Of a stretch of 41,327 bases of DNA, positions 1,121 through 28,000 are shown in pieces. The stretch is from Intoshia linei. Lineage: Eukaryota > Animalia > Orthonectida. Within the stretch, counting starts at the first letter, position 1, and each line of letters starts with the position of its first letter. Location: contig LWCA01000195.1 of NCBI GenBank assembly GCA_001642005.1, positions 1 to 41,327 of the forward strand. Reading direction: 5' to 3'. The notes below the pieces were generated by a model. The model searched no databases. It was not told the DNA's origin and was given only the letters and a program-made list of their open reading frames with translations. The position numbers were made by a program, and so were the translations under genes.

Positions 1121-1578
1121 TTAAAGATATAAAAACCATTATTCTCGTTTTCCAATACATTTCCAGACAACGCAAAGGAATATCCCTCATCATTAACCAC
1201 TGTGCCATATAAAAATTGGTATAAATGTAGCAATGTAAAATCGTGCATTGAAATCAGCTCAGTTAATCAAGTCCAAAAAAAATAAACTAATGACACTAAC
1301 GATTAGTAAAACTTTAATTCGTTTATCGACAATATCCTCCAATTTATTAGGTGTGGATTTGCCTATGGTCATTTGTCAATTTTTAATCGAAAACAATAAA
1401 AATTAAGCCTAAGGAAATAACACAAAACTGTGACAAATTATAAACTAAAATTAAATGTAAAATAAATTTTTAAATTGAAAACATTTGTGTTTATAAATAA
1501 ATTCGTATATGCTATAACGACAGATTACACGTGTAATTGCTCTTTATTTAGTTATACAGATATATTTTAATTCGAGGA

Positions 1579-2850
1579 ATGAACATATTTAGGCTAGTCG
1601 GTGACATGTCACATTTGCTGGCAATATTATTGTTATTATTCAAAATATTTAAAAGTCGCTCTGTAGCAGGTTCACATTATCTGTTTTTAATTACAATATT
1701 TAGGACTATCCGGAAACTGCCAGTTAATGTTTCTGATAGTTTTTGTTACGCGGTACCTTGATATTTTTACAAATTTTGTCTCAATTTATAATTCCTCAAT
1801 GAAAATTGTATTTATCGTATCACTTGGTGTAACTGTTTTTGCAATATATCGAAAATTTCGATCAACATATAATGTAAATCATGATACGTTCCGATCCGAA
1901 ATTTTGAGTACTGTGTATTTAAATTTAAATATAGTCTTATATAGTTATTTGTTCTGCTGGACTAGCTTTCTTGGTCAATTACAAATTTTCATTTTTTGAG
2001 GTAACTTTTAAAAGGTATATACAAGATTAAGACGACATGTTGACTCTTTAGAAATGCTGAAAATTATATCATTTTTTGATGTCCTGTATTTACATATTTT
2101 ATGTTCCATAAAATGGAGAGTATTCTAAGAATACACTTTCAGTAAATTGAGTCATTGGATTGATGTTAAATTACATTAATTGTAATTAAGGCTATAAAAA
2201 AATGGATTAAATTAGAAAAAATTCAAGTAATCGAAACTACTTTCACTGTTTTCTGATTTTTGTTTAAATTTTTCTTTGTGTAATGGGTTTTAGCCTTGAA
2301 AAGTTGAATTCAACTCATTGGACATTGATAGGTTTTTTCAGAGGTCAGCTTTGGATGCAAATTCGGTTATTTTAACAAAAATGTATTTTTTCTTACAAGC
2401 GATCATTTTTTATAGATCCAAAAATTGGAAGGGATTTTTTTTCCAATTGATTCCTTTATCATTTATTATAATATAACATTTAGATACTATGGACTTTTTC
2501 TATATACCTCGAAAGTGTAGCTATTTTACCACAGTTATTCATGATTACGAAAACAGGCGAAGCTGAAACTATCACTAGTCATTATTTGTTTGCTCTCGGG
2601 TCTTATCGAGCATTGTATCTAATTAACTGGGTTTGGCGTTTTATTTCTGAAGGACATTTTGATATTATTGTTGTTGTTGCAGGAATTGTACAAACTTTGC
2701 TATATGCCGACTTTTTCTATCTTTATGTAACCAAAGGTATTTTTTGTCTTATTTTAAAGTACATTTTATATTAATACTATTTTGATAAAGATTTAATATT
2801 AAAATCGAATTTTAGTAATACAAGGTAAAAAATTAGCTTTGCCTGCCTAA
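1579..2850 (+). CDS. KDELR: ER lumen protein-retaining receptor (KDEL receptor/ERD2), 5 exons, 212 aa
   Basis: Exons 1579-1669, 1704-1907, 1945-2000, 2484-2736, 2816-2850, all GT-AG, total 639 nt. Protein [16 protein letters not shown]...[45 protein letters not shown]...GKKLALPA* carries the family hallmark motifs. Confidence 0.97.
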
Positions 2851-2897: not shown

Positions 2898-5800
2898 TCA
2901 TATTTCTATTTTGTTTATGGATAATCTAAATTCATGTTACTATTGCAGTTAATTGTTTACTTTTCTACTATTCCAGATTCACTCCATTTAGTTGGTCCAT
3001 ATTTTTTGTATTGTTGTAGACCCGATCTAAAAAATAAAAATGATAATATATTCATTCGCAATTGTGATCTAAGAGAGTTTCAAAAAAACATTTTTTTGTT
3101 AAATTTATGAGATGATTTTCGAGGATTTATTTACATCAATTCACTATAAAAGTACTGAATTTTATATGGAAATTTAATTAAATTAGTGGAATATGTTTGT
3201 TTAGTTATTCTACTACGAAAAATTACAATGCAATCATAACTCCACTATCTATGGAATAATTTTTATTGAATTCAAACACTACTGAACAGTTGTCCTTGGC
3301 CATTGATGTCATCATATCTTGTAATCGTTTATTTTCTAAGAAAATTAATTATTTTTATTTTTTTGGATTAAATTTTAATTTAAAAATACCTGATATTTGT
3401 CCTATTATTAAGATTTGATTGGCTTGTGCATCTAACATAGCTTTTTCTAAATAATAATGAAAAGGTGTGATATGATTAGGTTGAATAATTTAAAATTGAA
3501 TATACAGAATGTAAAGGATACATTTAAATCGGATAACCTATTACCTGTAATTTCCACAATTATCGATAATACAGCTTCTTGGAATGATAAGCAAATATCC
3601 TCAATCTTTATGGATGCATTATTAATCAGGTTCTGAAATTATTAATGAACCCATAAAATAAATAAAATTGAATACATGGTAATTATTATATTATTAATAT
3701 AATTGGAATTTATCGTTTTCCATAGGGTACAAATTCCTTTTCCTTCACTTGTATAAAATTGAATGTCTGTGTGCTACAATTTACAGTTTGTTAATTAAAA
3801 AACTAAGAGTCTTAGAATTTAAAAAATCCAATTTCTAATACAGTTTTCTAGAGTGAAGTTTTATCGAAAATGTTAATTTCAGCAATTGAGTCCTACATGG
3901 TCAAAAACCCAATTAACAATTTTTTTTGATTCAACAATTAAAATCAGCCCTAGAATTAACTGAAAATGTATGTCTGTCAGTTTGTCAGAAATGTAGTTTT
4001 AAAAACACCAATTAGCAATACAGAGCTATTCTAATAGTGTTTACTACATACTGGATAGTTTTATCTAGTAAATAATGAAGTTTTATCACAAATTTGATTT
4101 TCAGTAATTGAGTCCAGGGCAAAAAACCAACTTATTCTTTTTGTAAATAAAATGAGTCCTATAAATTTACAAAACATTAATTCTGGAACGCGTTTTAAAA
4201 GCATTAACACTATCGTTAATCTCAACCTAAGAAACTTAAAACTTAATGGTCCAAACCACAAATGACCCTTTTATTTACCAATCAAATTAAAAATCAAAAG
4301 TCTTAGAATTTAAAAAAATCACAGTTATTTCCAGTTAGCCTGTACAAAAAATTAAATCTCACAAATTGACGTTTTTACGGGCAAAAAAGCACTTTAGCAT
4401 TACATTTTTTATTTGATTCCTATATTATTAAAGCAAAAAATATTCAATAAATACCCGTAATAGTCCTAGAATTAAAAAAGATCTGGGTCACATGAATTTT
4501 CCAAAAAATGTGAAAAATTATTGTATTGCCAGAAATAATAAATAAATGAGTTATTAATTTGTTTTACGTAGTTACAATGAAGCATAATCTATTTTAATAT
4601 ATTTTACGTAGATCCAATAACTTTTAAGCTAAGTTTAAAAACTGATTAAAATTGTAATAATTATGTAATTTTTGAAATCACCTTAATACCTTCATTTTAA
4701 AAATACTTTTAAAACTTATTAGTCTACAATTTGAATTATATTACAAATTTAAATTAATAATTCATAAAAAATATCATGGATACTAATAATTTCAAATATT
4801 CTTTTTGAGTATAAATTAATTTATCCATATTATCAATCACAAAATGAAATCACGAGATATGATAAATTGGAATACAATTTTTTGTATGAATGAATCTTTC
4901 GATAATACAATGTGGAAATTACAGAGATTCCAAAATTCTCAAACGTTCAACTGTGAGAACGTATACATGTAGAAATAATAACTGCAACTGCAAAGTACGT
5001 TCAATAACGACACTAACTTCGACTATATCATAGGAATGTAATAATGACATAAATTAGTTAAATATATTTCGTAATTGATTTAATTGTACTTCCATTTTCG
5101 AAACAGTCAAATTGTAAATAAAACTACTTAATTTTTTCATTACATAAAAATTTCCTCGATTTGTAAAAATTTTCAACATGTTAATTTTGTGTTTAACCCA
5201 TTGGACTAACCCGATTGTCAGACTTTTAAATTAAATATAAAATCCTAAATAGACCTTAATTTAATTAATACATAATGAATCTAGATATCTTGTTCATTAT
5301 CGACAATAAAGGTGATTTTTAAATTTCGAACAAATTTGTGAAACGGTTTAAATTATCCAAAAAAGAACAAACTATTATAATTTTTTAAGTGGCTAACGTA
5401 CTTAACAAAAATTCCATTCCTTAAAAAATTGTTTTGGTTGCGACAATACATTAAATTTAATAAAAACAGATTTATTTATAAATAACAATATTTACTCTTT
5501 CAAATATTTTGAGCACTTTCACTTTCATTACTTTCAAAAAAATTTTTTGCAATATAGGTAATTAATATTATTCTTTTTATAAATTTCAACTAGATGCGTC
5601 AAATAAATATTCAAAAGCGCGAATTAGTTGTCACATATTTCAATAGAGGGTATACCCAAGTAAAAATTGCTAGAGAGCTTTCCGTATCCAGACGTGCAGT
5701 TCAAGAAATAATTAAAAAGCACCAAAAAGGTCTACCTCTAATTAATCGATTTAAAAATGGAAGACCAAGAAAAATGTCAGTCAGGGAGGATCGTTTATTA

Positions 5801-8800
5801 GAAATTAAAGCAAAATCAAACTTTTCTTGACTGCTAATGAGCTGCGAAATTCGATACCATCGGGTTCACAAGTTAGTCTCGGTACTGTTAAACGTTCTCA
5901 AAGACGTAGCGGTTTATTTTGACGCATTGCAGTGAAAAAGCCTTATCTGACAACCTTGCACAAGAGAAAGAGATTGAAGTGGTGCCAAAACCGTCGAGTC
6001 TGGTCTGAGCATGATTGGAATTTTGTCGTTTATAGCGATGAAACCAAGATAAATCTAAACTTTAGAGCCAGGAGGTATATAAGACGGCGAAAAAATACTA
6101 GATATAGATTTTCATATGTCCACCCCACTGTCATTCTCTCCATTTTATATGATCTGGGGTGCGATTATGCAGAACGGAAAGAGATTGCTTGTTCGATACT
6201 TTAATCGCGTTAATTTGCATGAATATTGTAATATTCTGAAACGTTATATGTGCGAAATGCATGAGACAAGATATATTCTACAACAAGATGGTGCTTCGTC
6301 TCATACATCACGATTAACGAGTCAATGGATACAAAGTCAACATCTAAATATGCTACCAAATTGGCCGCCACAGAGTCCAGATTTAAATATAATTGAAAAT
6401 CTTTGGAGTGAATTGAAGAAAAGGATGCGTCAACGATCTCAAAATTTGGAGTCACTATGGAGAATAACAAAGGAAGAATTCTATAAAATACCTAACGATT
6501 ATATCCAAAATCTTTATGAGTCTATTCCGAGAAGATTAGATGACGTATTTTCAGTAAATGGCGGAAATACCAAGTACTGACATTATTAAACCTTTTTAAA
6601 TTTAATTTATTTAATTATGTCCTTTTATCATAAAATTAATCACGGGTGCTATAAACATATGAACGACTAAAATTATTACAATTTAATATCATAATTGTCA
6701 TATCTAATAATTATCTAACAGTCTTGAAATTTAATTCATAACTTCCGATCATATTTACATTCCCTGAAATATAAAATAAATTAAACAAAAACACTTATTA
6801 ATAAAATAATTAACGATTTTATAAGGTGCTCAAAACATATGGACGGGTCTGTAGCTTAAAATTAAATGGACACCCATAAATAAATAATTATTAATTTATA
6901 ATGTTAATAAAAAACTACAAACCTGTAAACTGCACAGTGTTCCAGATAAATAAAAATAAAAACCATTTATCATGTATGGCAATAAAATTAAATCTGTCCC
7001 TTTTTTAGAAAGTTCTTCAATGGTTGCACCAAGATATTCTTCTTTATCGTAAAATTTTAGATATTTTGACATTTTCAAGTAAGCTTCTTCTATACTAATA
7101 TCCAAAGAAGATCCTATAATTTTGTATTTATCATCTTTTTTAACCATTATCTATAATTTGAATCAATATATAGTTATTTTAACGCAATATAAAATAATGT
7201 ACAATTGTACGTTTAGAAGGGAAACGATAAATAAGTCAATTTTTATAATAAAAAAATTATATATTATGAACATTTTTTACCAAACTGTCCATCCGGAATT
7301 TTCAGATTATTTTTTTAAAGATTTTGTATAGATTAAAGATAGGTTTTTTTTATTTATTTGATTACTTTGAAAATTCCTTGTAATGTTTGGTAAAAAATGT
7401 TCATAATATATAATTTTGATATTATGAAAATTAATACTTATTTAGTCTTAATCTAAAAAGTCCCTTCAAGGGTTAGATTAAAAAAAATCTTAAAATCCCC
7501 TTTAAGGTTTACTAAAAAAATAATGTGAAAATTCCTTTTTGACAGTATAGTAAAAAATATGTTAATAATATATAATTTCATATTATAAAAATTGAGACTT
7601 ATTTACTAAAATCGTTTAGAATCTCTATATAAAATAATAATTAACATAAAATGCAATATACAATGTAGTCTACATATATTCAACTTGTATTTATACCTGT
7701 GAGAATTTTCCACACAGATAAACAACCACGCAATTTTCAACTTTGCTGTAAAATTCACTTGCTTTTATGTCTAAAAATTATTTATAAGGTTCTTACTATA
7801 ATTTACGAGCATAAGCGTGGTTTACAACAACAATTGGTTTATTCCACATTTGAGCCAGCATTCTCATTACTACTGCTAAATCACTAAGACAAGATACAGT
7901 GCCAGGTCCTAAGATATCATTTTTTGTAAATTATATCCTTAGTTATATAATAAGTTAGCAATATTTGTTTGTGTGTGTATGTGTGTGTTACCGTTTATTT
8001 CAATAAATACCAGTCTTAGAATTTTATAAAGTCCACATTTCAATTACAGTTTTTTCCGGGTGTTAGCAAAATAAATTTCAACCGCCCAAACTAACATCTT
8101 ACGGGTTAAAAAGCCCAGTTGTCCTTTTTTTTTGAAAATGACAAAATAGGTTTTTATAATTTTATTTTTTCAGAATTTGTTATTTATGACAATTTTTAGG
8201 ATTGGACTGTTTTTTAATATTATACACACATTATGTCTAATAAGTTAAAAAAATGGGATAACAATTATTTACAAAGAACAGATGAAAAGGTACATGTATA
8301 ATTATTGACGCAATAGTGACAAAAATACCGTTGGAAAAACAAATGATATCTATATCTTGATATTGTAGATTTGATTCAGTCAAGCACTGTCTAATTAAAG
8401 GCAAAACATTTTTACGATGGTGAGTTGCGATAAAGTATGGATAATAATCTATTTAATTTAATATAATAATATAAATAAAGTATATTACAGGTTGATCCAA
8501 TAATCCAACTTGTTTATATTAATCAGACATATTTAGGTTAGCATATACTGACATACCCACATGTTTTACGTGTCGTGTCAAGTTAGAATAGGATCCAAAA
8601 TTTAAAAAAATTTGAAACCCTGAGAATCTTATAAGTTAGAAGCAATATATAATAATGTACTATGTAGTATGTAGTATGTAAAAAAAATAAAAATAATTCA
8701 AAACCAAATATAATAAAATAATTTTTTTTAATTATTACCACTCTATATTGAGTCAGTTACTGCATATTATATTCAATTTAGTGTTTATTATACAGTAGTC

Positions 8801-9879
8801 CAATTCCTGATGAACGAATTATTTAAATTCTAAATTACAAAAATGCTGTTAATTTATGTGGGTTTTGATGATTTAATCACATAATTAATATACTGCTTTA
8901 CTTACACTGTGTCAGTCACAGAAAATTAAATATCTGTCTTTCTGTGTGTGTTACTGTTTAATTATAAAATAAAATCCTACAATTTAAAAAATTCCAATTT
9001 CTAATAGTTTTTCGAAGATCATATTTTATCGCAAATTTCATTTTCTAAAATTGAATTCGTCAGGGTCAAAAACTGAAATTACCCTTTTTTTAAAATAAAA
9101 TGATTCCTAGAATGCGTTTTAAAATCATTATATAGTAATTGTAAATTAATGAATGTATTTTGTGGCATCTATACATGCAATTGTGATGTAAGGATAAAAA
9201 ATAAAATTAAATGTAAATAATTTACTTTAAATTAAAAGGCAATGTCAAATGACCGGTCCATGGTGAAAAAAGTGTGGGAACAACTTCTCAAAGGATTGGT
9301 AATAATGAATAGTAACATTTTCTTGAATTTATTTTTTGGTAGAATTAAAACAATTCGCCATCAGTAAAGCTAGATGCTGTTTGTACGAAGTACATAACAG
9401 TCAAGCTAGTATTATATAATACGCAATATTATAGCAAATGAAACTTTTAAATCTTTATTTGAGTCGTAAACATATATTTTAAGCTTAAATTGCATTTAAA
9501 AATTTTGCAGAAAAACGTAAATCAAAATTTCTCTTAATTTTTATCAAAATTGAAGATAGTCAGGTTACTACTACTATATGGCTTTTCACATGGAATTACC
9601 CATAGATAATAAAATCTAAATTTTTATCTTTTTTCATTATTTTTAGTTGTAAATTTTTATCAAATTGTTGAAGAAATGACTTGAAATATATGTTGATAAA
9701 ATCAAAATATTATTCAACTTCTGACCTTATTTGGACCATCCTGGTGTATATAAGACAATTATACCTTGATAATCAGGACTTTCAAAATACTTGCTTTTAT
9801 TAATTAAAACTTTATTGTCGTCTATGATTCCTACAGATAAAAGATATCCATATCCTTCAATTCCAAGTGAAATCACCAT
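2898..9879 (-). CDS. OSGEP: Divergent OSGEP/Kae1-like protein (tRNA N6-adenosine threonylcarbamoyltransferase family), 10 exons, 328 aa
   Basis: Exons in transcription order: 9765-9879, 8329-8448, 7807-7908, 7697-7770, 6923-7150, 3545-3632, 3390-3446, 3227-3335, 2961-3026, 2898-2925. All GT-AG and phase-compatible, total 987 nt. Translation MVISLGIEG...ATHHRKNVLPLI...QDIDIICFSNGPG...LAQMWNKPIVVVNHAYAHI...LPYMING...EDICLSFQE...VEITEKAM...NKRLQDMM...SIDSGVMIA is collinear with eukaryotic OSGEP. Orthology versus paralogy is unresolved. Confidence 0.9.
3805..4480 (+). repeat. Internal fragments of the dispersed Helitron-like family in OSGEP-like intron 5
   Basis: Shares blocks such as TCTTAGAATTTAAAAAATCCAATTTCTAATACAGTTTT and GGGCAAAAAAGCACTTTAG with about 8975-9120, 10530-10900 and 35140-35330. 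No termini seen. Confidence 0.6.
5495..6851 (+). mobile_element. Tc1-like DNA transposon (DD35E spacing), decayed, in OSGEP-like intron 5; left outer end not found
   Basis: Right end GGTGCTCAAAACATATGGACGGGTCTG|TA. Inner direct repeat GGTGCTATAAACATATGAACG near 6645. Inverted copy CAAATATTTTGAGCAC at 5501. Encloses the transposase pseudogene. Confidence 0.8.
5594..6580 (+). pseudogene. Tc1-family transposase pseudogene
   Basis: HTH region with GRPRK, then KKPYL, YSDETK, MIWGAI, QQDGASSH and WPPQSPDLNIIENLW. Broken by frameshifts near 5825 and 6130 and an in-frame TGA near 5920. Confidence 0.93.
7936..8270 (+). mobile_element. Non-autonomous Helitron-like element, 5' part (internally deleted, no 3' end)
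   Basis: Starts A|TCCT followed by a GT-rich microsatellite, like the copy at 10439. About 8140-8270 closely matches 11505-11650. Confidence 0.7.
8488..9743. mobile_element. Possible old mariner/maT-type non-autonomous element filling OSGEP-like intron 1
   Basis: Imperfect inverted ends TA|CAGGTTGATCCAATAA and (reverse complement) CAGGATGGTCCAAATAA. The right-hand TA is not flush. Confidence 0.35.
8930..9409 (+). mobile_element. Helitron-like element, 3' part with hairpin and CTAG|T end
   Basis: Hairpin CTGTTTGTACGAAGTACATAACAG followed by TCAAGCTAG|T, nearly identical to the end at 11903. Confidence 0.75.
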
Positions 9880-13341: not shown

Positions 13342-14529
13342 ATGAAGGATTTTACAATTAATTCAATTTTATCAATTTCTAACGAAAATATTAAAATAAC
13401 CGCATCAAATATTCCTTGTAATCAGGAAAATGATTACTCCAATAACTCTAAATTTCCTCACCAATTAACATATAAACCTTATTTTTACCTAAACCAGGAA
13501 ACTTTTATCAAAAAGTATGTTTATTAATATAGTTGTACATTTAATATTAGAAATTATGGACAATATGGTATGTTTCTATATCTAGGTATGGTTATTTCCA
13601 TTTAACTTATCTTACGAGGATAATAATTATTTTTTTTACTCTTTATCATAAATATCATTTTATTATATAAATTTTATAATACACAACAAACTATATCAGT
13701 TTATATTAATCTTGAGTAAAATAATTGCTACATTGATTAAAACGATTAGTATATAAGCTATTGACACTCTTAATCTTTTAGATAGTTAGTACATTACTTG
13801 TTTTATGCATGAAAATTTTTTATCGTTAGTTAATATATCTTTACTTCCTTAGAAAATCTCATACATACAAATACTCCAGAAAAAATTTCACCAAATGATA
13901 AAAACAATAAGCTACTTTTGCAAGGAAAATATCATGAAGATATGTACATAAATATCCAAAGAAGACCACGAACAGCATTTACAAGCCAACAACTCATTGA
14001 ATTGGAAAAACACTTTATAGAAAGCAATTACCTTTCTAGACCTCGACGGTACGCTGTTGCAACGAATCTTCGATTAACGGAAACACAAGTAAATTAAACT
14101 TGGAAAAATTATTTTTTGATAAAAAAATAATAAATATACATGTCATTCGATTTGATATGTAAAATTCTTAATAACAAATCGAAATAAAATACAAATAACT
14201 GTAGATAAAATAATGAACTAAATCAAAAACTTGTAAAAAGTAAGTCATTAACTTAGTACAGTGTAGTCGAAAAATTAACTCAATTTGTTTATTCAGAGAT
14301 TTTTAATAGATATAGGATCCAGTGTTAATTATAGAGGATACAGTTGATTCCCTCGACCCTGTTGGAGGTCACACTAATTAAAAACATTTAAAAATTTGAC
14401 ACATCCACCATTTAGGCTAAATCTCAATTTTAGGTAAAAATATGGTTCCAAAATAGAAGAATGAAGAGCAAAAGATGTGATAAATCAATAAACAAGATAA
14501 AATGGAAAATTAATAAAACAAATAATTAA
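13342..14529 (+). CDS. MNX1: Mnx/HB9 (motor neuron and pancreas homeobox) transcription factor, 4 exons
   Basis: Exons 13342-13514, 13551-13567 (or 13551-13585), 13853-14088, 14434-14529. N-terminal eh1-like FTINSIL. Homeodomain [44 protein letters not shown]|[14 protein letters not shown] carries the Mnx-type TAFTSQQL and YLSRP motifs. Confidence 0.88.
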
Positions 14530-19003: not shown

Positions 19004-22000
19004 ATGCATGTAATATGGTTTTTGCTCGGGTTTATCCGTGCTGCAACATTCATAGAGTATGAAAAAACATACCGGGAAATATACACCGAAGATAGAAAAA
19101 AAGAAATTTCCTATCTAGAATATTCAAACGAAAATAAAACTGTTCGAGAATATAATTATGATTTAAAAAATATCAAAAATATTTTTTCTACGCCGACATT
19201 TAACATGGCTAGGGGTAAAAAAATTGTGGCCACATCAACATGTGGAGATGAAGGTGAAAGTGAATTGTACTGTAAATTAACTGGAGCAAAGCATAGTTTT
19301 AATGAAAAAGATTTTTCTCTTATTCGGGGTCAGTACTGCGATTACTGCAATTTAAATGTGGCAAATCAAAGACATGTTATAGAATATGCTATCGACGGAA
19401 CCGAACGCCATTGGCAAAGTCCACCTCTTTCTAGAAGTATAAAATACAATGCTGTAAATATAACTATCGATCTGGAACAAGTATGAACCTTTTGATATTT
19501 TTTTACTCACTATTATTTTGTTTAGGAGTTTCATGTAGCTTACATTTTTGTAAAAATGGCAAATTCACCTAGACCAGGTGTGTTTGTGTTGGAGAAAACT
19601 GTCAATTTCGGTAAAACATGGGAAACTTGGCAATATTTCGCTAGTTCACGAAAAGAATGTGATGTTTTTTTTGGTCAAGAAAATTATTCGGATACAATAG
19701 TAGCAGATAATTCAGTTATTTGCACTACTCGATTTTCCAATGTAGTACCTTTAGAAGGTGGAGAGGTATTACAATTTCAACTTTAATAATAAATATATTT
19801 ATTTATTTATTAATTCCATTAACACTATAAGATTGTCATTTCAATGATCAATCAAAGACCAAGCGCTAAAAAGAAAAAATTTTCAAGAGAATTGAAAGAT
19901 TGGACTAGATGTACAGGTATCCGATTTCGTTTATTGCAAACTCGAACCTTACATTCACATTTAATTTCGGTTCAAAGAAAAGATCCAACCGTTACTAGAA
20001 GAGTAAATTCATTTCCACTATATTTAACTTTTCTTAGTATTTTTATAGTATTAAAGATATTTCAATTGGAGGCAGTTGTGCTTGCAATACATATGCCAGT
20101 GTTTGTGACAAAAATGATCCTTTGTATCCAAACCGTTTAAGTTGTCATTGTCAGTTCAATACTTGCGGTGAAACTTGTAATCAATGTTGTCGTGGATATC
20201 AACAATATCCCTGGATTCCACCACATGATTTAGAAACTGATCAAATTCCTTGTCAAGGTATTTATAATTTCCATATTCAAAATGAGGGTTAAGGGTGGAG
20301 GGTATCATATAAACTTAATTATTATGAAAATTTTTATTTTTTCACAAAATTTGCATGTCTGATATTATAGTTATTATAGTTATACTTATTTTAGATTTAT
20401 TTTAAATAAAAAATGTTTATTTTTGAGTTATATTTAACTACAAATTAAAAATTTACCATTATTATTTGGAAGGGAAAAATAATAATTTTATAAGAAAGGG
20501 TCGGTTTTAATTATTTATTGTATAGTATACAATAAGTAAAAGTTTGTAATTATGATGATTTAAATTAAAATTATTTAGCATGTCAATGTTACAATCATTC
20601 AAAGTTATGTATTTATAATGCAACAATAGCTGAAGATAAAAAAAGTATAAACATCTATGGAATATATTCTGGTGGAGGTTTTTGCCAAAATTGTCAACAT
20701 CATACAACTGGAATAAACTGTGAAAAGTGTACAGATACATTTTTTCGTCTAGATAGTAACAGTCTGTTCAAAGAAGATGGTTGCAAACGTAATTTATAAA
20801 CATTTTATTATATTCAAAATGTATCAGTATATCTGATTTTATTACCCAATATCGATGTTGTGGAATTGGTGGTTTTGACTACCTTTGAGTTCTTTAAAAT
20901 TAAATTCTTTTTTAAAAATAATGTTTATAAATCAAATTAGTGGTTATTAAACGTAATATTTCATTTAGTTTTACAAGCCTTATGAACAAATCCACTTAAT
21001 CAGACCCCAAAATAAAAAATCCAATTTTATCAATCCTTAAGGGAAAAATCGATTCTTTCCAATATTTTCTTAAAACCTTTCTATTATGTGAATATTCAAA
21101 AAATAATGTAGGAAATCTTTGATTTTCTCTTATTAATTTTCAAAAAAGGGGCCCTAAAATTTTTTTATCGCTTCGCTCGATATTTTTTCTCTCTTTTTCT
21201 CTATAATACTTTTTTGCTTTCGAAAACTTTAAAGGGCCTACGGCCCTTTGCTTAGCCCAGGGCCACGAAGTGGCTTAAGACGGCTCTGGTCTTATAGCGA
21301 TATAATCATCAATTTTACTAATTTATGATATTATTGATTTTTTCATGAAATTTTTGTTGGATTCTTAAGAAAAAATTTAATAAGATTTTGAAGATAATTT
21401 TTGGACTAAAATTTGGTAGTGCTTAAAAAAAGATCCGATAAAATGTTAAAAATATTTTCTTAAAAACCTATAAATTTTAATTTATAATATTTAATAATAA
21501 TAATAATTATAATTTATAAATTTGAACTGACATAATAGGAACGTACATATTTAATATGCAACCTTAAAATGGCAGAGACTATCAAATAGACCTAAATATA
21601 ATAGAGAATATAGTAAAGATATAGTGATTTATACTAAAATTACAATAAAAACGACATTACTTATGAAACGTCCTAATACATAAGGAACTAAGTATCTTAT
21701 TGCAAATTAGTTTTTATTTTTTATTTTTTTGGGAATTAAGAAAATATTTATAATTTATGATTCATAGTATCAGACGAAATGGTACTCCAGTGGGGTCCAG
21801 TACCCCATTTTGGAACCGCTGAACTAATTTGTCATTATTATTAAAATTGTTAATTATTTTTTACATTTAGCTTGTAATTGTGATAGTACATTTACGTCAG
21901 GATTATGCCAAGATATTTCTGGGGAATGCATTTGCAAAAAACAATATGCTGGAGAAAAATGTAATAAGTAAGATTTTATATTTTATTTATGAAATTTTAT

Positions 22001-25000
22001 TTTAAAATTATTACAAAAAAATACGATCAAAATGGTTAAATATCTAAATTTGACCTACAGGTGTAACGAAGGATTTTACAATTATCCGGAATGTTTAAAA
22101 TGTGATTGCTCAATTGATGGAACACAATCTCAACTTTGTGAAGTCGGAGGAGGTCAATGTCCATGTAAGCCCTTATACCGGGGATTGAACTGCAATAAAT
22201 GCAAACTGGGACGTTTTAAATTTCCAGAATGTATAGAATGTAAATGTAACAAGGCAGGCTCAATAAACGCAAATTGTGACAATGAAATTGGGCAATGCGA
22301 GTGTAAACAAGGTTTCAATGGTTTGAATTGTGATATTTGTGAAGATGGTTATTTTTCGTTTCCTTCTTGTAAAAAGTGTAATTGTCCGTATAAAACAGTT
22401 GAAAATGAAATTTGTGACAAATCGAATGGTAACTGTATTTGCAACAAAGATACACAAGGATTGGAATGCAATAACTGTAAAACCAATAAATTTAAATTCC
22501 CCGAATGTCTTGAATGTAATTGCATCGAAAAGGGTGCATCTAGTCTGCAATGCGGCAATGAAACTGGAATTTGCGACTGTCTTGCTCAATATACTGGAAA
22601 AAATTGTGAAAAATGTATAGAAAATTTTTACAACTTTCCAAATTGTGTACGATGTGATTGCCACTATAAAGGATCGACAAAAACTCAATGCGATTTAAAA
22701 ACCGGTAAATGTGAATGTTGGGAAAATTATACTGGTAATAAATGTAATTCTTGTAAATTGGGATATTTCAATTATCCTTATTGTGAAAAATGCAGCTGTA
22801 ATGTCCTTGGAACAGAAACAAATTCAATTAGCGAAATTGATGAAAGTAATTGTACTGAAAACGACAATTTAGAATGTAAATGTAAACTAAATGTTCACGG
22901 AAATAAATGTGATAAATGTAAAATTGGTTTTTTTGATTTATCTCAATATAATACGGACGGTTGCACAAGTAATTTTTAATTTATTAAAATAATTATTTTA
23001 TTATAATGTAAGTATAAATTTCTAACTTTTCAAATTTTACAAATTTTTATTTACGTTTATATTACATAAAAAAACATTTTTCAATTTTTTGATGACGATC
23101 GAACTTATTTTCTTCAGAAAGTGAAAAGGGGTGTAATAAATAAATTATTTAAAAATTATAGATATTTATAATGCGTAGTTACCAAAATAACTCGGCGCAA
23201 ATATTATTATACAAAACTTTAAATCTATTTTATATATTCAAATATATTCATTTTATATATACAATATGAATATTAACATAAAATAGTATTTTCGAACATA
23301 TAATCTTACTTCAAAAAAATGTGGCGGAAATTACCCCCAAAAAAACTTTTTTTACGAAGATCTGGCAATGTCCTATTTTATTTTGAGAACCATAAACTTA
23401 CATATGACACAAAAAAATATTGAAGTTATTTTTATAACGTACTTTTTTTTAATTAATGGTTTAATAATTGAACAAATTTGTGTAACATGGATAGAATTGC
23501 AATTAATTTAATAATAAAATATAATTCCGTGTATAAAGTGATAATACCTTGCATAAATCGTTAATAGGATGTTATACGCTAATAATTAAATTAGTTCTGA
23601 GTATTTATAAATTAATTTACATTTCTGATTAATGATCAAATTTGAAAAAACTTTTTTATTATATATTTTGGATAGTAACAATAAATTTATTAATTATAAA
23701 TTATAATATAATATAAACTGAAATATCTCAATAACTCGATAAAATTTAAAAAAATTTTCTACATTTTTTAACTACAAAATATATAAAAACGTGATATTTT
23801 TTAGTGAGATGGTTTTTTGAGTGTTCAGTGTTATAGATTTAAAACATTATAATATAAAAAAATTATACATTTTACATTGAATTTAGATTGCGAATGTTAT
23901 ACAAATGGAACTGTGAATAGAATAAAAAAATGCAATGATATTGGACAATGCTTTTGTAAATTATTTGTGACTGGTAAAAAATGTGAAAAATGTGTTCCAG
24001 GGACATATTTGTCAAAATTGGAAAATTATTTTGGTTGTAAAGGTATTTTAAATTTTTATGTGAAATTTATTAAATTTTTTGTTAATATTAAGAATGCAAT
24101 TGTCAAATTGGTGGATCCATGTTTAATTACTGTGATCAAATGACTGGTGCCTGTTTCTGTAAAAATAATGTAATTGGCCGGACGTGTAATGAGTAATTTA
24201 AAATCTTATTTATTTTATCTTATCTTAATTTTCTACTATTGTTTTAGTGATGGATTTAATATAAATTTATAGACCTGCAGATTATCACTTTTATCCATTG
24301 TTACACCAACTTAAATATGAAATGGAAATTTGTACAACACAAAGTGGCGGTAGAGTTCGATATGATTACGACAAACGTATTTTTCCTGATTATTCGTGGT
24401 TGGGTTATGCAATATTCTCAAATATACAGGTTTCATTCATATTAATCTATAATATAGAGCAGGGATTCTCAAAATGGACGATATCACCCCAGGGGGGGGG
24501 GGGGGGGNNNTGGACGATATCACCCCAGGGGGGGGGGCGATTAATTTAGATAGGGTGCGATTTAAAAAATATCATGTATTATATAATATAGAGTGGAAAT
24601 GTGTAGATGTTCAATTTACATTTTTTTTGAAATTGTGGGATTAATAATTACATTTTCAATTTTTATTTTAATCGAAATATATAAAAAATAATGGTTCAAA
24701 ATATACTCAAAATTATTTTTCACCGGGAATGCGTAGATTTATAGGGTTGAAATTTATCTTACTAACACCTGGAATAAACTTTAATTGAAATTTGGACTTT
24801 AAATTTAAAGATAATAATTTTAAGACTGGTAGTTATATTAGACTGTTATTGAAATATACAATAACAAACACACAGACAAACAAAGCATATTATATGAGAA
24901 GATTAACTTTACTCAATAATTATTGAGTAAATTTTTAAATAAATATTATACGACTTAGTCGAATTTTTTTTAAAGGGGCGTTAAAAAAAATATATTTCTA

Positions 25001-28000
25001 AAAAGGGGGCGGTAGGCCAAATTAGTTTATGAACCCCTGATGTAGAGTTTACTTTAAAACATACACCACTAACTCTCAGTATCATATATTACAGAGGTTA
25101 CCAAAGTTTTTTCACCTAAGACCGGTAATTTCACGTGTAATATTGTACGGACTCCGTAAAACAATTTTTAAGAAATGATACCAGAATATTATCAATATTT
25201 TATTTTTTTCCAGTTCAATATTAACTTTTGTAAATTTTTCATAATGACCAATGAAGGCATAGCCAAACCTGCCGTTCTCCGAGACATCTCTTTGTTGACT
25301 TGATAAAATTTTAATTAAACGAGCCCCATATTTTTCAAAGATGAGCATTTAAAAATATATATTCTTGAATATCATAACTATTTTGTGTGTGCTAAATTTA
25401 AAATGTCAAGTTAACATCTTTTGGAAGGTGACTAGGTCTATGTAACACTACTCATTGGTTGGAAACTTTTTTAGGCCTTTTTTCATTATCGAAGGTTTTC
25501 AAGCAGGATAGGTTCGGATATGGGGGTTATCCGATATATACATTATATATGCATATTGAAACAGCTATTATTTGTCAATATGGCATATCGTCATTAATTT
25601 ACATTGTGAACCAGTTTTGTTTTACCGCTAATTGTGCAGTGCTGGGGATCACTTATTAAAACTACTGTGTTTATTTATTAATCACGAAATGAATAATTTA
25701 ATAAAATTTAGTCATCCATGATAGCAAACGTAAATATAAAATATGAAGATGTTTATCAACTTTTGATCCGATACGTAAATTACAATTATGAAAAAGTGGA
25801 ATTAGACGTAGAATTTTTGTCTCCAGGAATAGAATCACAAAATTTAAAAACAATATTAAAATATACAAACATTCCAAAATTTCATTATTTGGGTAACCGT
25901 GGGGTAACAGTATCAGTTTTATTAAAGACTACTGTAAAAAAGATAATATTTAGCGTAAACAGTAAATTATACATTGATTATTTTGTTTTATTACCTGCCA
26001 CTTATACTGAAGCATCAAATTTGAAGAAAACTGTACATCATTCTTGCAACATGAATAAAAAAAACGAAATGTGCATAAAATTTGAAAATATTAAAATGAA
26101 AAATTCAATTCAATTGGCAACAATAATGGATAAAAAACTAAAAGTTTCTTTGACTGTTGAAGAACATTTGCGTGATTTAATTAAATTGGATAAAGGAATC
26201 ACAAAAGTCAAGCTTTATTGGGAAAACGAAACTACTCATGGATATTTTGAAAAGTTTATTACAGTGTTGGAATATTTTCAGTACAAAGGAAACGTAAAGA
26301 ATGAAATTATTTACAAGACAGGGCTTGATTTTGTTAGATATCGACAAATTTTATCCGATTGTTTTTATACGTAAAATTTTTTTTATTTCATGTCAAATTT
26401 ATTTAGGCATTTTTGTAGACATGTCATCATGGACAATGATGGTCAAGTATTGAAAAATGAATATAAATCACATGCTCTTTTGGAGTTTAATCTATTTGAA
26501 TCTGACTCTTTAATTTTGGTTTTTAAATGTGTAAATTTTATTATTTATTATTCTAGCATGCAATATATTATATACCAGAAAGTGAATGGGATGACAATTA
26601 TCTTGTACCCCAATTTAAATGTCTTTCTGAGAAAAATGAGTAATTATAAATTTATTTACATTAATTATTATTTATTAATTGTTATTTTTTATTATAAACA
26701 ATCAATATAGTAAGTCATTAATTCATTTCTACAATTATAATATTATTAAATATTGTACACTATTATTGGTGTTATTATTTCTACACTATTATTTTTTTAT
26801 CATAGATTGTGATTACAATCTTTGTTTATTTAAATATCAAACTTTGATTAAAGAATAATTAAAAGTATAATTTTTAGTTTTTGTATTATAATTATAATTG
26901 TGATAGTTATGTATAGAAAATTTTTTTTTAAGCACTCATAGGTATATTACTCCTTTAACGTATGTTATATTTTCAGTATAGATGTGAAATGTTCAAATTT
27001 TATTAATTACAAAATAAACCAATACACAAAGTCTTTTTAAATCACAGATTTTTTATTTGTTCTATTTTTAAAAGGATCTCTACTTAAATCCAATCATTTT
27101 TACTAAAATCCAACAATTTTTACTAAAAATCCACTTATACTAACCCTTAAGGGAAAAATCAAGTTTTACCACTTCTTAAAGGAAAAATTAAATCTATTAA
27201 AACTAAATTTTAGAGTTGGTACGACCAAATTTTTTCCTTACGGGTTGATAAAACTGGATTTTTTTTTATAGAGTTGGTAAAACTGATTTTTTCATTTTAG
27301 TGTTGTTAAGACTAAATTTTTTATCTTAAGAGTTGGTAAAACTCGATTTTTCCCTTAAAGCTTTGTAAAATTGGAATTTTTACTTATGAGTTTGTGAAAT
27401 TGAATTTTTCCTATTAGGGTAGGTAAAAGTGGATTTTTCCTTTTAAGGTTGGTAAAACTGATATTTTCATTTTGCGGTTGGTAAGACTGAATTTTTCTCT
27501 TAAAGCTTGGTAAAATTGGAATTTTCACGTAAGGGTTTTTGAATATGATTTTTTCATTTTAAGGTTTGTAAGACTATATTTTTCCCTTAAGGGTTGGTAA
27601 AACTCGATTTTTCATTTTAGAGTAGGTAAAAGTGGGTTTTTATTAAAAATGATTGTATTTAAGTAAAAATTATTGGATTTAGGAATATTCTATTTTATAA
27701 GCATAAATGAATAATTAAATAGTTCAAATCTTCTAAATCTAGAGAAAAAAAATCAATAACACAAAAATCGAGAGATAAATCCGAAATTAGTTATGGATTC
27801 ACTTGATTTGGATTTTATTCGGTAGTGTAAACCTAATCAAAGCATTATTTAACTATTTCTATATTAGTTGACTATAAAAAGATTTTAACCTGTTTTAAAA
27901 TTTAATTGATGACATGGATGCAGTCTCAGTAAATTGTTGGAATAAATTGAATATTTTGGTGGTTAATCATATATTATTCAGTCATTACGTTATTAATTCA

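What the first reader, a model, noticed from the sequence alone, without database searches (positions are those of the whole stretch)
2898..9879. Intact OSGEP/Kae1 homologue that keeps its metal ligands but has lost nucleotide/substrate-binding motifs: candidate pseudoenzyme or neofunctionalised KEOPS subunit
Seen: ten phase-compatible GT-AG exons give an uninterrupted 328-aa ORF despite TE-filled introns, which argues against a dead pseudogene. The HxxxH motif (NHAYAH), the Tyr in VYL, the Asp in SID and GPG are retained. Compared with human OSGEP from memory: EGSANK becomes EGYGYL, HIE becomes HIK, SGGNT becomes CGKFS, GETIDIAVGNCLDR becomes GSSLDISIEEAYLK, SFSG becomes YLSG, GGVGCN becomes GQISEN, DNG becomes DSG, and the C-terminal QRYRTD..W is lost. 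Known: Kae1/TsaD/Qri7 are near-universal and very conserved in these loops; animals normally have one OSGEP plus mitochondrial OSGEPL1; bacteria pair TsaD with the inactive paralogue TsaB. Inference: this is either a second, catalytically impaired OSGEP (a TsaB-like partner or regulator of KEOPS), or the only copy in a lineage whose t6A pathway is remodelled. The neighbouring KDELR is highly conserved, so genome-wide fast evolution is not a sufficient explanation.
Basis: partly seen in the sequence, partly recalled or inferred. Interest (0 to 1): 0.8.

Follow-up and report, generated by a model that had tools for sequence, protein, structure and literature searches.

The report
Degenerate extra OSGEP gene in Intoshia
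The parasite Intoshia linei has, besides its normal gene for the universal tRNA-modifying enzyme OSGEP/Kae1, an old extra copy that is still an intact gene but has lost about half of the family's invariant residues, so it probably no longer does the original chemistry.

Summary
The gene is Intoshia linei A3Q56_02212 (OAF70036.1).

It is not the only copy. The genome also has a canonical OSGEP (contig C2463, 62 bp head-to-head with Bud32), an OSGEPL1-like gene, YRDC and a Pcc1-like exon. The window copy shares all nine intron positions and phases with the canonical gene but is only 38% identical to it.

It keeps 69 of 161 columns that are at least 95% conserved in 113 OSGEPs. The canonical copy keeps 132 and a microsporidian keeps 135.

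- **Kept:** the His-His-Tyr-Asp metal site and the two adenine-contacting side chains.
- **Lost:** the ribose Asp, the SGGNT loop, the Thr-pocket Ser, the A37-stacking Asn, two Bud32-interface residues and the C-terminal RYRTD..W tail.

Neutral decay is rejected: 0 of 2000 simulations stay open, and replacements are far more conservative than random.

The best reading is a selected, catalytically impaired Kae1-fold paralogue. Its role is unknown, and there are no expression data and no orthologues. The scan has flagged other candidate pseudoenzymes in this genome.

The parts
9765..9879 (-). Exon 1 (ATG at 9879-9877, in-frame TAA just upstream). Encodes the first ASKHA phosphate loop, here EGYGYL instead of EGSANK.
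   Evidence: The 115 nt length and phase 1 are the same as canonical exon 1.
8329..8448 (-). Exon 2: beta3-alpha1 loop (F40Y, R41Y, T43Y in C. elegans numbering) and helix alpha1 (HHRKN...).
   Evidence: Pfam TsaD 27.8 bits, above the cut-off on its own. 120 nt, as in the canonical gene. It is the only stretch with residual DNA similarity to the canonical locus.
7807..7908 (-). Exon 3: GPG loop, helix alpha2 and the first metal His. The public model starts this exon at 7875, skipping 11 aa.
   Evidence: It is the best-kept exon, with 12 of 18 conserved columns retained.
7697..7770 (-). Exon 4: second metal His (codon split over the intron), HIK in place of HIE, the metal Tyr, and CGKFS in place of SGGNT.
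   Evidence: Only 6 of 18 conserved columns are kept.
6923..7150 (-). [quoted passage not shown] The ribose Asp becomes Leu, the A37-stacking Asn becomes Glu, and Bud32-interface Lys and Ser become Asn and Tyr. The adenine Glu and the Gly are kept.
   Evidence: Pfam TsaD 24.5 bits. 17 of 55 conserved columns are kept. A phmmer search of 1.84 billion representatives finds only the gene's own product.
3545..3632 (-). Exon 6, 12 nt shorter than the canonical exon 6.
3390..3446 (-). Exon 7: GQIS(E)N in place of GGVGCN. The adenine-contacting Asn is kept.
3227..3335 (-). Exon 8: metal Asp kept (SIDSG in place of CIDNG).
2961..3026 (-). Exon 9. If its donor is not used, the frame stops at once at the TAA at 2959-2957, which is where the public model ends.
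   Evidence: The 66 nt length is the same as canonical exon 9.
2898..2925 (-). It has no homology to the conserved RYRTD..W tail. An alternative acceptor at 2905 gives 8 aa plus a TAA at 2881-2883.
   Evidence: 0 of 5 conserved tail columns are kept. No evidence chooses between the three possible 3' ends.
5590..6580 (+). Degenerate Tc1/mariner-type transposase remnant inside the 3.3-kb intron 5, antisense to the gene.
   Evidence: ORF 6116-6577 hits Pfam DDE_3 at 58.5 bits. Broken frames upstream are visible.

Best explanation
**What it is.** This is an old DNA-level duplicate of the cytosolic OSGEP/Kae1 gene of the orthonectid Intoshia linei. It has been kept as a protein-coding gene by relaxed purifying selection, while the canonical copy beside Bud32 carries out t6A synthesis.

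**What is shown.** It has the same ten-exon structure as the canonical gene and an intact frame. It is predicted to adopt the Kae1 fold. It retains the His-His-Tyr-Asp metal site and the adenine-contacting Glu and Asn.

It has lost the residues that hold the ribose and the threonylcarbamoyl group of TC-AMP, the oxyanion loop, the Asn that stacks on tRNA A37, conserved Bud32-interface residues and the C-terminal tail that reaches the active site.

**What is inferred.** It no longer transfers threonylcarbamoyl to tRNA and acts as a non-catalytic Kae1-fold protein. It may still bind metal and perhaps an adenine nucleotide.

**What is speculative.** Its comparatively well-kept helices alpha1 and alpha2 might let it dock on Pcc1/LAGE3 or on catalytic OSGEP, as inactive TsaB does on TsaD. 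That would let it modulate KEOPS or serve a t6A-independent KEOPS role.
For: **Gene model and copy number**
- There are three TsaD-family loci in the genome. The C2463 locus has every canonical motif, and only these two OSGEP-type loci match P0001.
- All nine intron positions and phases are shared. Seven of the first nine exon lengths are identical, and the two differences are multiples of 3.

**Family assignment**
- The closest solved relatives are cytosolic OSGEP/Kae1 (human 6GWJ, E 1e-53), not TsaD or Qri7.
- Pfam TsaD scores 143 bits.
- The AF2 model has pLDDT 87, and its best Foldseek hits are Kae1/OSGEP at TM 0.86-0.88.

**Degeneration**
- 69 of 161 near-invariant columns are kept, against 132 for the canonical copy and 135 for a microsporidian.
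- It scores below NCBIfam's curated cut-offs for arch_KAE1 (202 against 375) and gcp_kae1 (147 against 207.8). An annelid OSGEP passes both.
- The residue mapping comes, with residue roles from PMC2094082, PMC7913687, PMC13377070 and PMC8565320.

**Selection**
- Identity by codon position is 0.56, 0.65 and 0.46, and GC by position is 0.39, 0.28 and 0.23.
- NG86 gives dN 0.55 and dS 1.53.
- Neutral simulation at the same DNA identity expects 21.9 stop codons, and 0 of 2000 runs stay open.
- Replacements average BLOSUM62 +0.08, against -0.94 (sd 0.10) under neutrality.

**Regional pattern**
- The alpha2/His exon is best kept. The SGGNT exon, insert I and the tail are worst kept.
Against: - There is no transcript evidence. 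The protein's 90% cluster has only the genome-derived entry, but the same is true of the canonical copy, so this is uninformative.
- No orthologue exists in any database searched, so selection on this lineage alone cannot be measured.
- The pairwise dN/dS mixes both branches, and dS is saturated.
- Four introns are far longer than the species' 57-bp median and carry repeats (PMC6543705). This fits a weakly expressed or weakly constrained gene.
- The conserved last exon is gone.
- Retention of the metal site and adenine contacts fits a new enzymatic or ligand-binding role as well as it fits a scaffold.
- The phylogeny does not fix the time of duplication.
- No binding partner was tested.
Confidence: 0.6

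Rival explanations
1. It is a recently dead or dying gene. The copy was functional for most of its history, which explains the open frame and conservative replacements, but it is now unexpressed or non-functional and simply has not yet acquired a stop codon.
For: - Loss of the conserved last exon, and a stop codon lying exactly at the exon-9 donor.
- Long, repeat-laden introns in a genome whose median intron is 57 bp (PMC6543705).
- Loss of 92 near-invariant residues.
- No transcript-derived protein in the collection.
Against: - All 18 splice dinucleotides of introns 1-9 are intact, and there is no frameshift or stop in 319-328 codons of 26% GC DNA.
- 0 of 2000 neutral simulations stay open.
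- Replacements are about 10 sd more conservative than neutral.
- The metal site and adenine contacts are all retained.
Confidence: 0.2
2. It is a neofunctionalised metalloenzyme or ligand sensor. The Kae1 fold and its metal-plus-adenine pocket are reused for a different substrate or for nucleotide sensing, independent of tRNA and Bud32.
For: - Eight of ten Pa-Kae1 metal and nucleotide contacts are kept (His107, His111, Tyr127, Asp285, Glu176, Asn257, Gly172, Gly130), although only 43% of conserved columns are kept overall (PMC2094082).
- The t6A-specific contacts are the ones replaced (PMC7913687, PMC13377070).
Against: - The ribose Asp is replaced by Leu. Bulky Lys, Phe and Gln sit in the two glycine loops that line the phosphate and ribose site, so nucleotide binding may be blocked.
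- The residue set was chosen after seeing the data.
- There is no conserved new motif to point to, because there are no orthologues.
Confidence: 0.13
3. It is still an active t6A synthase isoform with an unusual active site.
For: - The essential His-His-Asp motif is intact (PMC13377070).
- Ser134Ala in C. elegans KAE1 keeps about 30% activity (PMC13377070).
Against: - More than twenty family-invariant active-site and interface residues are changed together. They include the oxyanion loop, the ribose Asp, the Thr-pocket Ser, the A37-stacking Asn and the tail Arg.
- It fails NCBIfam's curated Kae1 cut-offs.
- A canonical copy exists to do the job.
Confidence: 0.05
4. It is the only OSGEP of a lineage with a remodelled t6A pathway.
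For: None found.
Against: - A complete canonical 335-aa OSGEP can be read on C2463, 62 bp head-to-head with Bud32.
- YRDC, OSGEPL1-like and Pcc1-like loci are present.
Confidence: 0.01

Closest known systems
OSGEP/Kae1, the catalytic subunit of KEOPS (human 6GWJ, C. elegans 9X4G, P. abyssi 2IVN)
   Same: - Same fold and same gene structure as the species' own OSGEP.
- Same metal ligands (two His, Tyr, Asp) and the same adenine-contacting Glu and Asn.
- Best sequence and structure matches of all.
   Different: - 92 of 161 near-invariant columns are changed.
- It has lost the EGSANK loop, the SGGNT oxyanion loop, the ribose Asp, the A37-stacking Asn, two Bud32-interface residues, DNG and the RYRTD..W tail.
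- It scores below NCBIfam's Kae1 cut-offs.
TsaB/YeaZ, the inactive bacterial paralogue that heterodimerises with TsaD
   Same: - It is a degenerate duplicate of the catalytic subunit of the same superfamily, coexisting with an intact catalytic copy.
- The helices alpha1 and alpha2, used for TsaD-TsaB, Qri7-Qri7 and Kae1-Pcc1 pairing (PMC8565320), are among the better-kept parts.
   Different: - It is not a member: there is no match to the NCBIfam TsaB model.
- The window gene is full-length and keeps the metal site.
- It arose independently from eukaryotic OSGEP.
- Pairing has not been tested.
Pcc2, an archaeal paralogue of Pcc1 that became a fifth KEOPS subunit (PMC9889334)
   Same: It is a precedent for a duplicated KEOPS subunit taking a non-catalytic structural role.
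   Different: It involves a different subunit and domain of life, and it has biochemical proof. Here there is only sequence.
Qri7/OSGEPL1, the mitochondrial paralogue
   Same: Same superfamily.
   Different: - The window gene has no N-terminal extension and matches Qri7 only weakly (26 bits).
- The genome has a separate OSGEPL1-like gene on C1769.

Membership tests
TsaD/Kae1/Qri7 superfamily (Pfam PF00814) | Significant match to the family profile over the whole domain | tested here: met
   P0001 scores 143 bits, E 1.8e-41, over profile positions 22-263 of 264. Exons 2, 3, 5 and 6 match in colinear order.
TsaD/Kae1/Qri7 superfamily (Pfam PF00814) | Bilobal ASKHA fold with Kae1 inserts | tested here: met
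   The AF2 model has pLDDT 87 and pTM 0.83. The top Foldseek hits are Kae1/OSGEP at TM 0.86-0.88. The model rests on an alignment of canonical OSGEPs, so this is weak as independent evidence.
Kae1/OSGEP (functional t6A transferase of KEOPS) | Score above the curated family cut-offs (NCBIfam TIGR03722 arch_KAE1, TIGR00329 gcp_kae1) | tested here: not met
   202 bits against a cut-off of 375, and 147 against 207.8. Capitella OSGEP scores 404.5 and 268.2 and passes both. P0001 lacks 11 aa of exon 3 and has no conserved tail, which accounts for only a small part of the deficit.
Kae1/OSGEP (functional t6A transferase of KEOPS) | His-His-Asp metal motif (plus Tyr in Kae1) | tested here: met
   C. 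elegans H111, H115, D296 and Pa-Kae1 Y127 all align to identical residues (PMC13377070, PMC2094082).
Kae1/OSGEP (functional t6A transferase of KEOPS) | Ser-Gly-Gly(-Asn-Thr) oxyanion loop, described as extremely conserved in the family, TobZ and HypF (PMC7913687) | tested here: not met
   SGGNT is replaced by CGKFS.
Kae1/OSGEP (functional t6A transferase of KEOPS) | TC-AMP contacts: ribose Asp, adenine Asn and Glu, Thr-pocket Ser | tested here: inconclusive
   The adenine Glu and Asn and the Gly are kept. The ribose Asp becomes Leu and the Thr-pocket Ser becomes Tyr (PMC2094082, PMC7913687). Binding itself cannot be tested here.
Kae1/OSGEP (functional t6A transferase of KEOPS) | tRNA A37 pocket (Phe40 and Asn161) and the C-terminal RYRTD..W tail with the active-site Arg | tested here: not met
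   Phe becomes Tyr (conservative), Asn161 becomes Glu, and the tail is absent in all three possible 3' ends (PMC13377070).
Kae1/OSGEP (functional t6A transferase of KEOPS) | Assembly with Bud32 and Pcc1, and t6A activity | not testable with these tools
   Only indirect evidence is available. Bud32-interface K200 and S205 are changed to Asn and Tyr, and R249 to Lys (PMC13377070). Helices alpha1 and alpha2 are moderately kept.
TsaB/YeaZ | Match to the TsaB profile (NCBIfam TIGR03725) | tested here: not met
   P0001 has no TsaB hit at E 0.001. Canonical OSGEPs give weak hits of 20-26 bits.
Qri7/OSGEPL1 | Closest similarity to the mitochondrial clade, and an N-terminal presequence | tested here: not met
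   Qri7 structures score only 26 bits against 186 for OSGEP. The protein starts directly at the first beta strand.

The most novel reading that the evidence does not exclude
This would be a eukaryotic counterpart of bacterial TsaB. A Kae1-derived pseudoenzyme keeps its metal and adenine pocket and pairs, through helices alpha1 and alpha2, with Pcc1/LAGE3 or with catalytic OSGEP. It would thereby regulate KEOPS or carry a t6A-independent KEOPS function in a highly reduced animal. That would be an independent re-invention of the catalytic-plus-dead-paralogue pairing within the t6A machinery.
Probability: 0.15. Interest if true: 0.75.

Novelty: new variant of a known kind. Interest (0 to 1): 0.42.

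Why it matters
Kae1/TsaD/Qri7 is one of the few protein families present in all cells, and its active-site loops are almost invariant. Eukaryotes are described as having one cytosolic and one mitochondrial copy.

A third copy that is kept by selection, retains the metal and adenine sites, and has shed the t6A-specific and Bud32-facing residues would be a natural separation-of-function variant. It could show which parts of Kae1 serve functions other than catalysis. It would also parallel the bacterial TsaD-TsaB arrangement.

The value is limited for three reasons:
- It is known from one genome of an obscure parasite.
- It has no expression data.
- That genome seems to hold several degenerate enzyme duplicates.

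Tried and rejected
1. **Joined model.** The joined 328-aa model has no reference, so it was not given to any search, family-scan or folding tool. Those steps were done exon by exon or with the public 309-aa model P0001. The joined model was assembled from coordinates only inside local scripts, for statistics and trees.
2. It was replaced by coordinates.
3. **Word search.** The search with P0001 returned only itself. This blank reflects the lack of shared 5-mers, not the absence of relatives.
4. **Reaching OSGEP references.** An alignment of P0001 with the canonical exons as separate referenced rows reached 1818 OSGEPs. That alignment is untidy, so its scores were used only to fetch reference sequences.
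5. **Phylogeny.**
   - The quick tree puts the copy beside the Intoshia canonical gene (SH-aLRT 84), but on a saturated branch.
   - A tree that holds it outside all animals, with the microsporidian, is 15 log-likelihood units better, AU p 0.77.
   - The tree therefore cannot date the duplication.
   - The first 'careful' tree call gave no answer.
6. **Shared derived residues.** They favour the Intoshia canonical copy (15 of 35 against 7 of 31 for the microsporidian). This is only suggestive, and several could be convergent AT-driven changes.
7. **Other blanks.**
   - The look-up of encoding contigs had no record.
   - There is no Bud32 remnant upstream, and no DNA similarity between the two loci beyond exon 2, so a segmental duplication cannot be traced.
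8. **Rejected explanations.**
   - Contamination or horizontal origin is rejected: the composition, repeats and intron positions match the host genome.
   - The 'only copy' reading is rejected.


Full report
**What is there**

The window is AT-rich eukaryotic DNA (about 26% GC). On the minus strand between 9879 and 2898, ten exons with AG acceptors and GT donors join into a 987-nt frame of 328 codons plus TGA. Scanned separately by reference, exons 2, 3, 5 and 6 match Pfam TsaD (PF00814) at colinear profile positions 22-57, 60-91, 120-183 and 190-209.

A phmmer search with exon 5 against 1.84 billion representative proteins found one protein only, at 100% identity. It is OAF70036.1, hypothetical protein A3Q56_02212 of the orthonectid Intoshia linei, on a contig of exactly the window's length.

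- It starts exon 3 at an internal acceptor (7875), skipping 11 residues that include the family's GPG loop.
- It ends at a TAA (2959-2957) that overlaps the exon-9 donor.

The skipped residues are conserved (GPG, and an SCL shared with the canonical copy), so the longer exon 3 is the better reading. Nothing here decides among the three possible 3' ends, and none of them encodes the conserved tail.

**How the spliced model was handled**

The joined 328-aa translation has no reference, so I did not give it to any search, family-scan or folding tool. Those steps were run exon by exon or with the public model P0001. The joined model was built from coordinates only inside local scripts, for alignment statistics and trees.

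**It is an extra copy, not the only one**

A six-frame search of the whole 41.6-Mb assembly with PF00814 finds three loci.

- **C1769** is OSGEPL1/Qri7-like, with an HHM.AH motif and CTDNG.MIAW.
- **C2463** carries a textbook OSGEP. From its DNA I read a ten-exon, 335-aa gene with EGSANK, NHCIGHIEMGR, SGGNTQ, GET.D..VGN..DK, SFSG, GGVGCN, CIDNGAMIA and a QRYRTD..V.W tail. The public annotation (P0002) is a 271-aa partial of it.
- **Bud32** starts 62 bp from that gene's start codon, on the other strand, and is the only full-length Bud32 match in the genome. This confirms an earlier scan note (s1-783165).

YRDC/Sua5 is present. A Pcc1-like exon passes Pfam's cut-off when scanned alone. No Cgi121 match was found. 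A search of the genome with P0001 itself hits only the window and C2463. The t6A pathway is therefore intact without the window gene.

**Relation to the canonical gene**

All nine intron positions and phases are shared. Exon lengths are identical for exons 1-4 and 7-9 (115, 120, 102, 74, 57, 109, 66 nt), and the two differences are multiples of three (228 against 225, and 88 against 100). This is a DNA-level duplicate, not a retrocopy.

The duplication is old:
- Protein identity is 38%.
- NG86 dS is 1.5, which is saturated.
- The introns and flanks are unalignable.
- There is no Bud32 remnant upstream.

The copy is slightly closer to the Intoshia canonical protein (38%) than to any of 113 other OSGEPs (31-37%). 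It also shares more derived states with it (15 of 35) than with any other sequence (7 of 31 for a microsporidian). These include rare changes such as Pro to Cys and Pro to Asp.

The trees are not decisive. The quick tree joins the two Intoshia copies (SH-aLRT 84), but the terminal branch is saturated. A tree with the copy outside all animals next to the microsporidian is 15 log-likelihood units better and is not rejected. That is what long-branch attraction would produce. The most parsimonious reading is a duplication within the orthonectid lineage, but this is inference.

**How degenerate it is**

| Measure | Window copy | Intoshia canonical | Comparison sequence |
|---|---|---|---|
| Columns kept, of 161 at least 95% conserved in 113 OSGEPs | 69 | 132 | 135 (microsporidian Edhazardia, the worst reference) |
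| NCBIfam arch_KAE1, cut-off 375 bits | 202 | 300.5 (271-aa partial model) | 404.5 (Capitella, an annelid) |
| NCBIfam gcp_kae1, cut-off 207.8 bits | 147 | 245.2 | 268.2 (Capitella, an annelid) |

Fast evolution of the genome is therefore not the explanation.

The mapping to solved structures comes from HMMER alignments. Residue roles come from the literature: P. abyssi Kae1 with AMPPNP (PMC2094082), E. coli TsaBD with a TC-AMP mimic (PMC7913687), C. elegans KEOPS-tRNA (PMC13377070, PDB 9X4G/9X4H) and a review (PMC8565320).

Kept:
- the metal ligands (C. elegans H111, H115, D296; Pa Y127)
- the adenine contacts (Pa E176, N257)
- G172 and G130
- D156, G179 and R50
- the GPG loop

Changed:
- The first phosphate loop is changed, including the Thr-pocket Ser (S10Y, A11G, N12Y, K13L).
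- C112A and E117K are changed beside the metal site.
- The oxyanion loop is changed (S134C, G136K, N137F, T138S).
- G160E and N161E are changed; N161 stacks on A37.
- The ribose Asp is lost (D164L).
- The adenosine loop is changed (G264Q, G266S, C267E).
- N297S is changed.
- The beta3-alpha1 loop is changed (F40Y, R41Y, T43Y).
- The Bud32-interface residues K200N and S205Y are changed, and R249K is a conservative change.
- The whole tail, which carries the active-site Arg mutated in Galloway-Mowat syndrome, is lost.

By exon, the alpha2/His exon is best kept (12 of 18 conserved columns). The SGGNT exon (6 of 18), insert I (17 of 55) and the tail (0 of 5) are worst kept. The pattern is not uniform decay. 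The metal-plus-adenine core survives, while the parts specific to threonylcarbamoyl transfer, tRNA A37 and Bud32 are replaced.

**Is it a dead gene?**

Several results argue against neutral decay:
- Identity to the canonical CDS is 0.56, 0.65 and 0.46 at codon positions 1, 2 and 3.
- GC by position (0.39, 0.28, 0.23) has the same coding periodicity as the canonical gene.
- dN is 0.55 against dS 1.53.
- Neutral simulation from the canonical CDS to the same DNA identity gives on average 21.9 stop codons, with none of 2000 runs open. It expects 25% amino-acid identity against the observed 38.5%.
- Replaced residues average BLOSUM62 +0.08 (62% non-negative), against -0.94 with sd 0.10 under neutrality. 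No simulation exceeds -0.63.
- All splice dinucleotides are intact.

The frame has therefore been under purifying selection for most of its history, although relaxed. A recent death cannot be excluded, for four reasons:
- The conserved last exon is gone.
- Four introns (1316, 420, 546 and 3290 bp) far exceed the species' 57-bp median (PMC6543705) and hold repeats, including a DDE_3 transposase remnant.
- There is no expression evidence.
- No orthologue exists in the collections searched.

**Structure**

AlphaFold2 on P0001 with 44 OSGEPs gives pLDDT 87 and pTM 0.83. Its best Foldseek matches are Kae1/OSGEP (TM 0.86-0.88), ahead of TsaD and Qri7. Because the alignment is made of canonical enzymes, this shows compatibility with the fold and little more.

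**Most likely function**

Shown:
- It is a selected, full-length Kae1-fold paralogue.
- It has an intact metal site and adenine contacts.
- It lacks the residues needed to hold and activate TC-AMP, to seat A37 and to engage Bud32 as canonical Kae1 does.

Inferred:
- It does not make t6A.
- It acts non-catalytically, and may still bind metal and an adenine nucleotide.

Speculative:
- It may dock through helices alpha1 and alpha2 on Pcc1/LAGE3 or on OSGEP. That surface mediates Kae1-Pcc1, TsaD-TsaB and Qri7-Qri7 pairing (PMC8565320, PMC6722078).
- This would make it an independently evolved analogue of TsaB. It is not a TsaB family member.

No paper in the library links OSGEP with a pseudoenzyme, and a review of t6A enzymes mentions only TsaB as a paralogue of this kind.

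**Context**

Other first-stage notes on this genome list several candidate pseudoenzymes and fast-evolving duplicates: a GalNAc-T, an aldo-keto reductase and an ECT2 duplicate. I did not check them. They suggest that degenerate duplicates may be a habit of this genome, which lowers the surprise of any single case.

**Verdict**

- This is a new variant of a known kind, of moderate interest.
- The decisive data are transcripts, orthonectid orthologues and binding assays, none of which can be obtained here.

Noticed in passing
window 7875-7908 and 2957-2961: The public protein model OAF70036.1 uses an internal acceptor in exon 3, dropping 11 conserved residues including GPG. It ends at a TAA that overlaps the exon-9 donor. 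The longer exon 3 looks like the better model.
   Followed up: partly
L006 (G000:C2463:4000-13000), minus strand 5855-3068: The canonical Intoshia OSGEP is annotated only as a 271-aa partial protein (A3Q56_00323). A complete ten-exon, 335-aa gene with the conserved tail can be read from the DNA. Bud32 starts 62 bp away on the other strand.
   Followed up: yes
L004 (G000:C1769), about 2155-2349 minus strand: The OSGEPL1/Qri7-like gene also shows changes in normally conserved loops. It has SGAHC where the family has an SGG-type loop, and a KDNAPGD stretch where DDA.GE is usual.
   Followed up: no
whole genome G000: There is no six-frame match to Cgi121 (PF08617). There is only one short Pcc1-like exon (C2456:11139-11270), which passes Pfam's cut-off only when scanned alone. 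KEOPS may be reduced in this parasite, or these small genes may be too divergent or too split to detect.
   Followed up: partly
window 5590-6580 (+): A degenerate Tc1/mariner-type transposase (Pfam DDE_3, 58.5 bits for ORF 6116-6577) lies inside intron 5, antisense to the gene.
   Followed up: partly
window about 3810-3900, 4290-4380, 8010-8110, 8975-9100: Short look-alike repeat units, each beginning with a '...cttagaatttaaaaaa...' type motif, recur in introns 1, 2 and 5. They are probably a MITE or SINE family. Related interspersed repeats link the canonical locus to window 27215-27641 and 29347-29633.
   Followed up: no
window 1552-2771 (+), 13834-14094 (+), 19004-26374 (+): The neighbours are a well-conserved KDEL receptor lying tail-to-tail with the OSGEP copy, a homeobox exon, and a laminin gene (Laminin_N plus many laminin EGF repeats).
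   Followed up: partly
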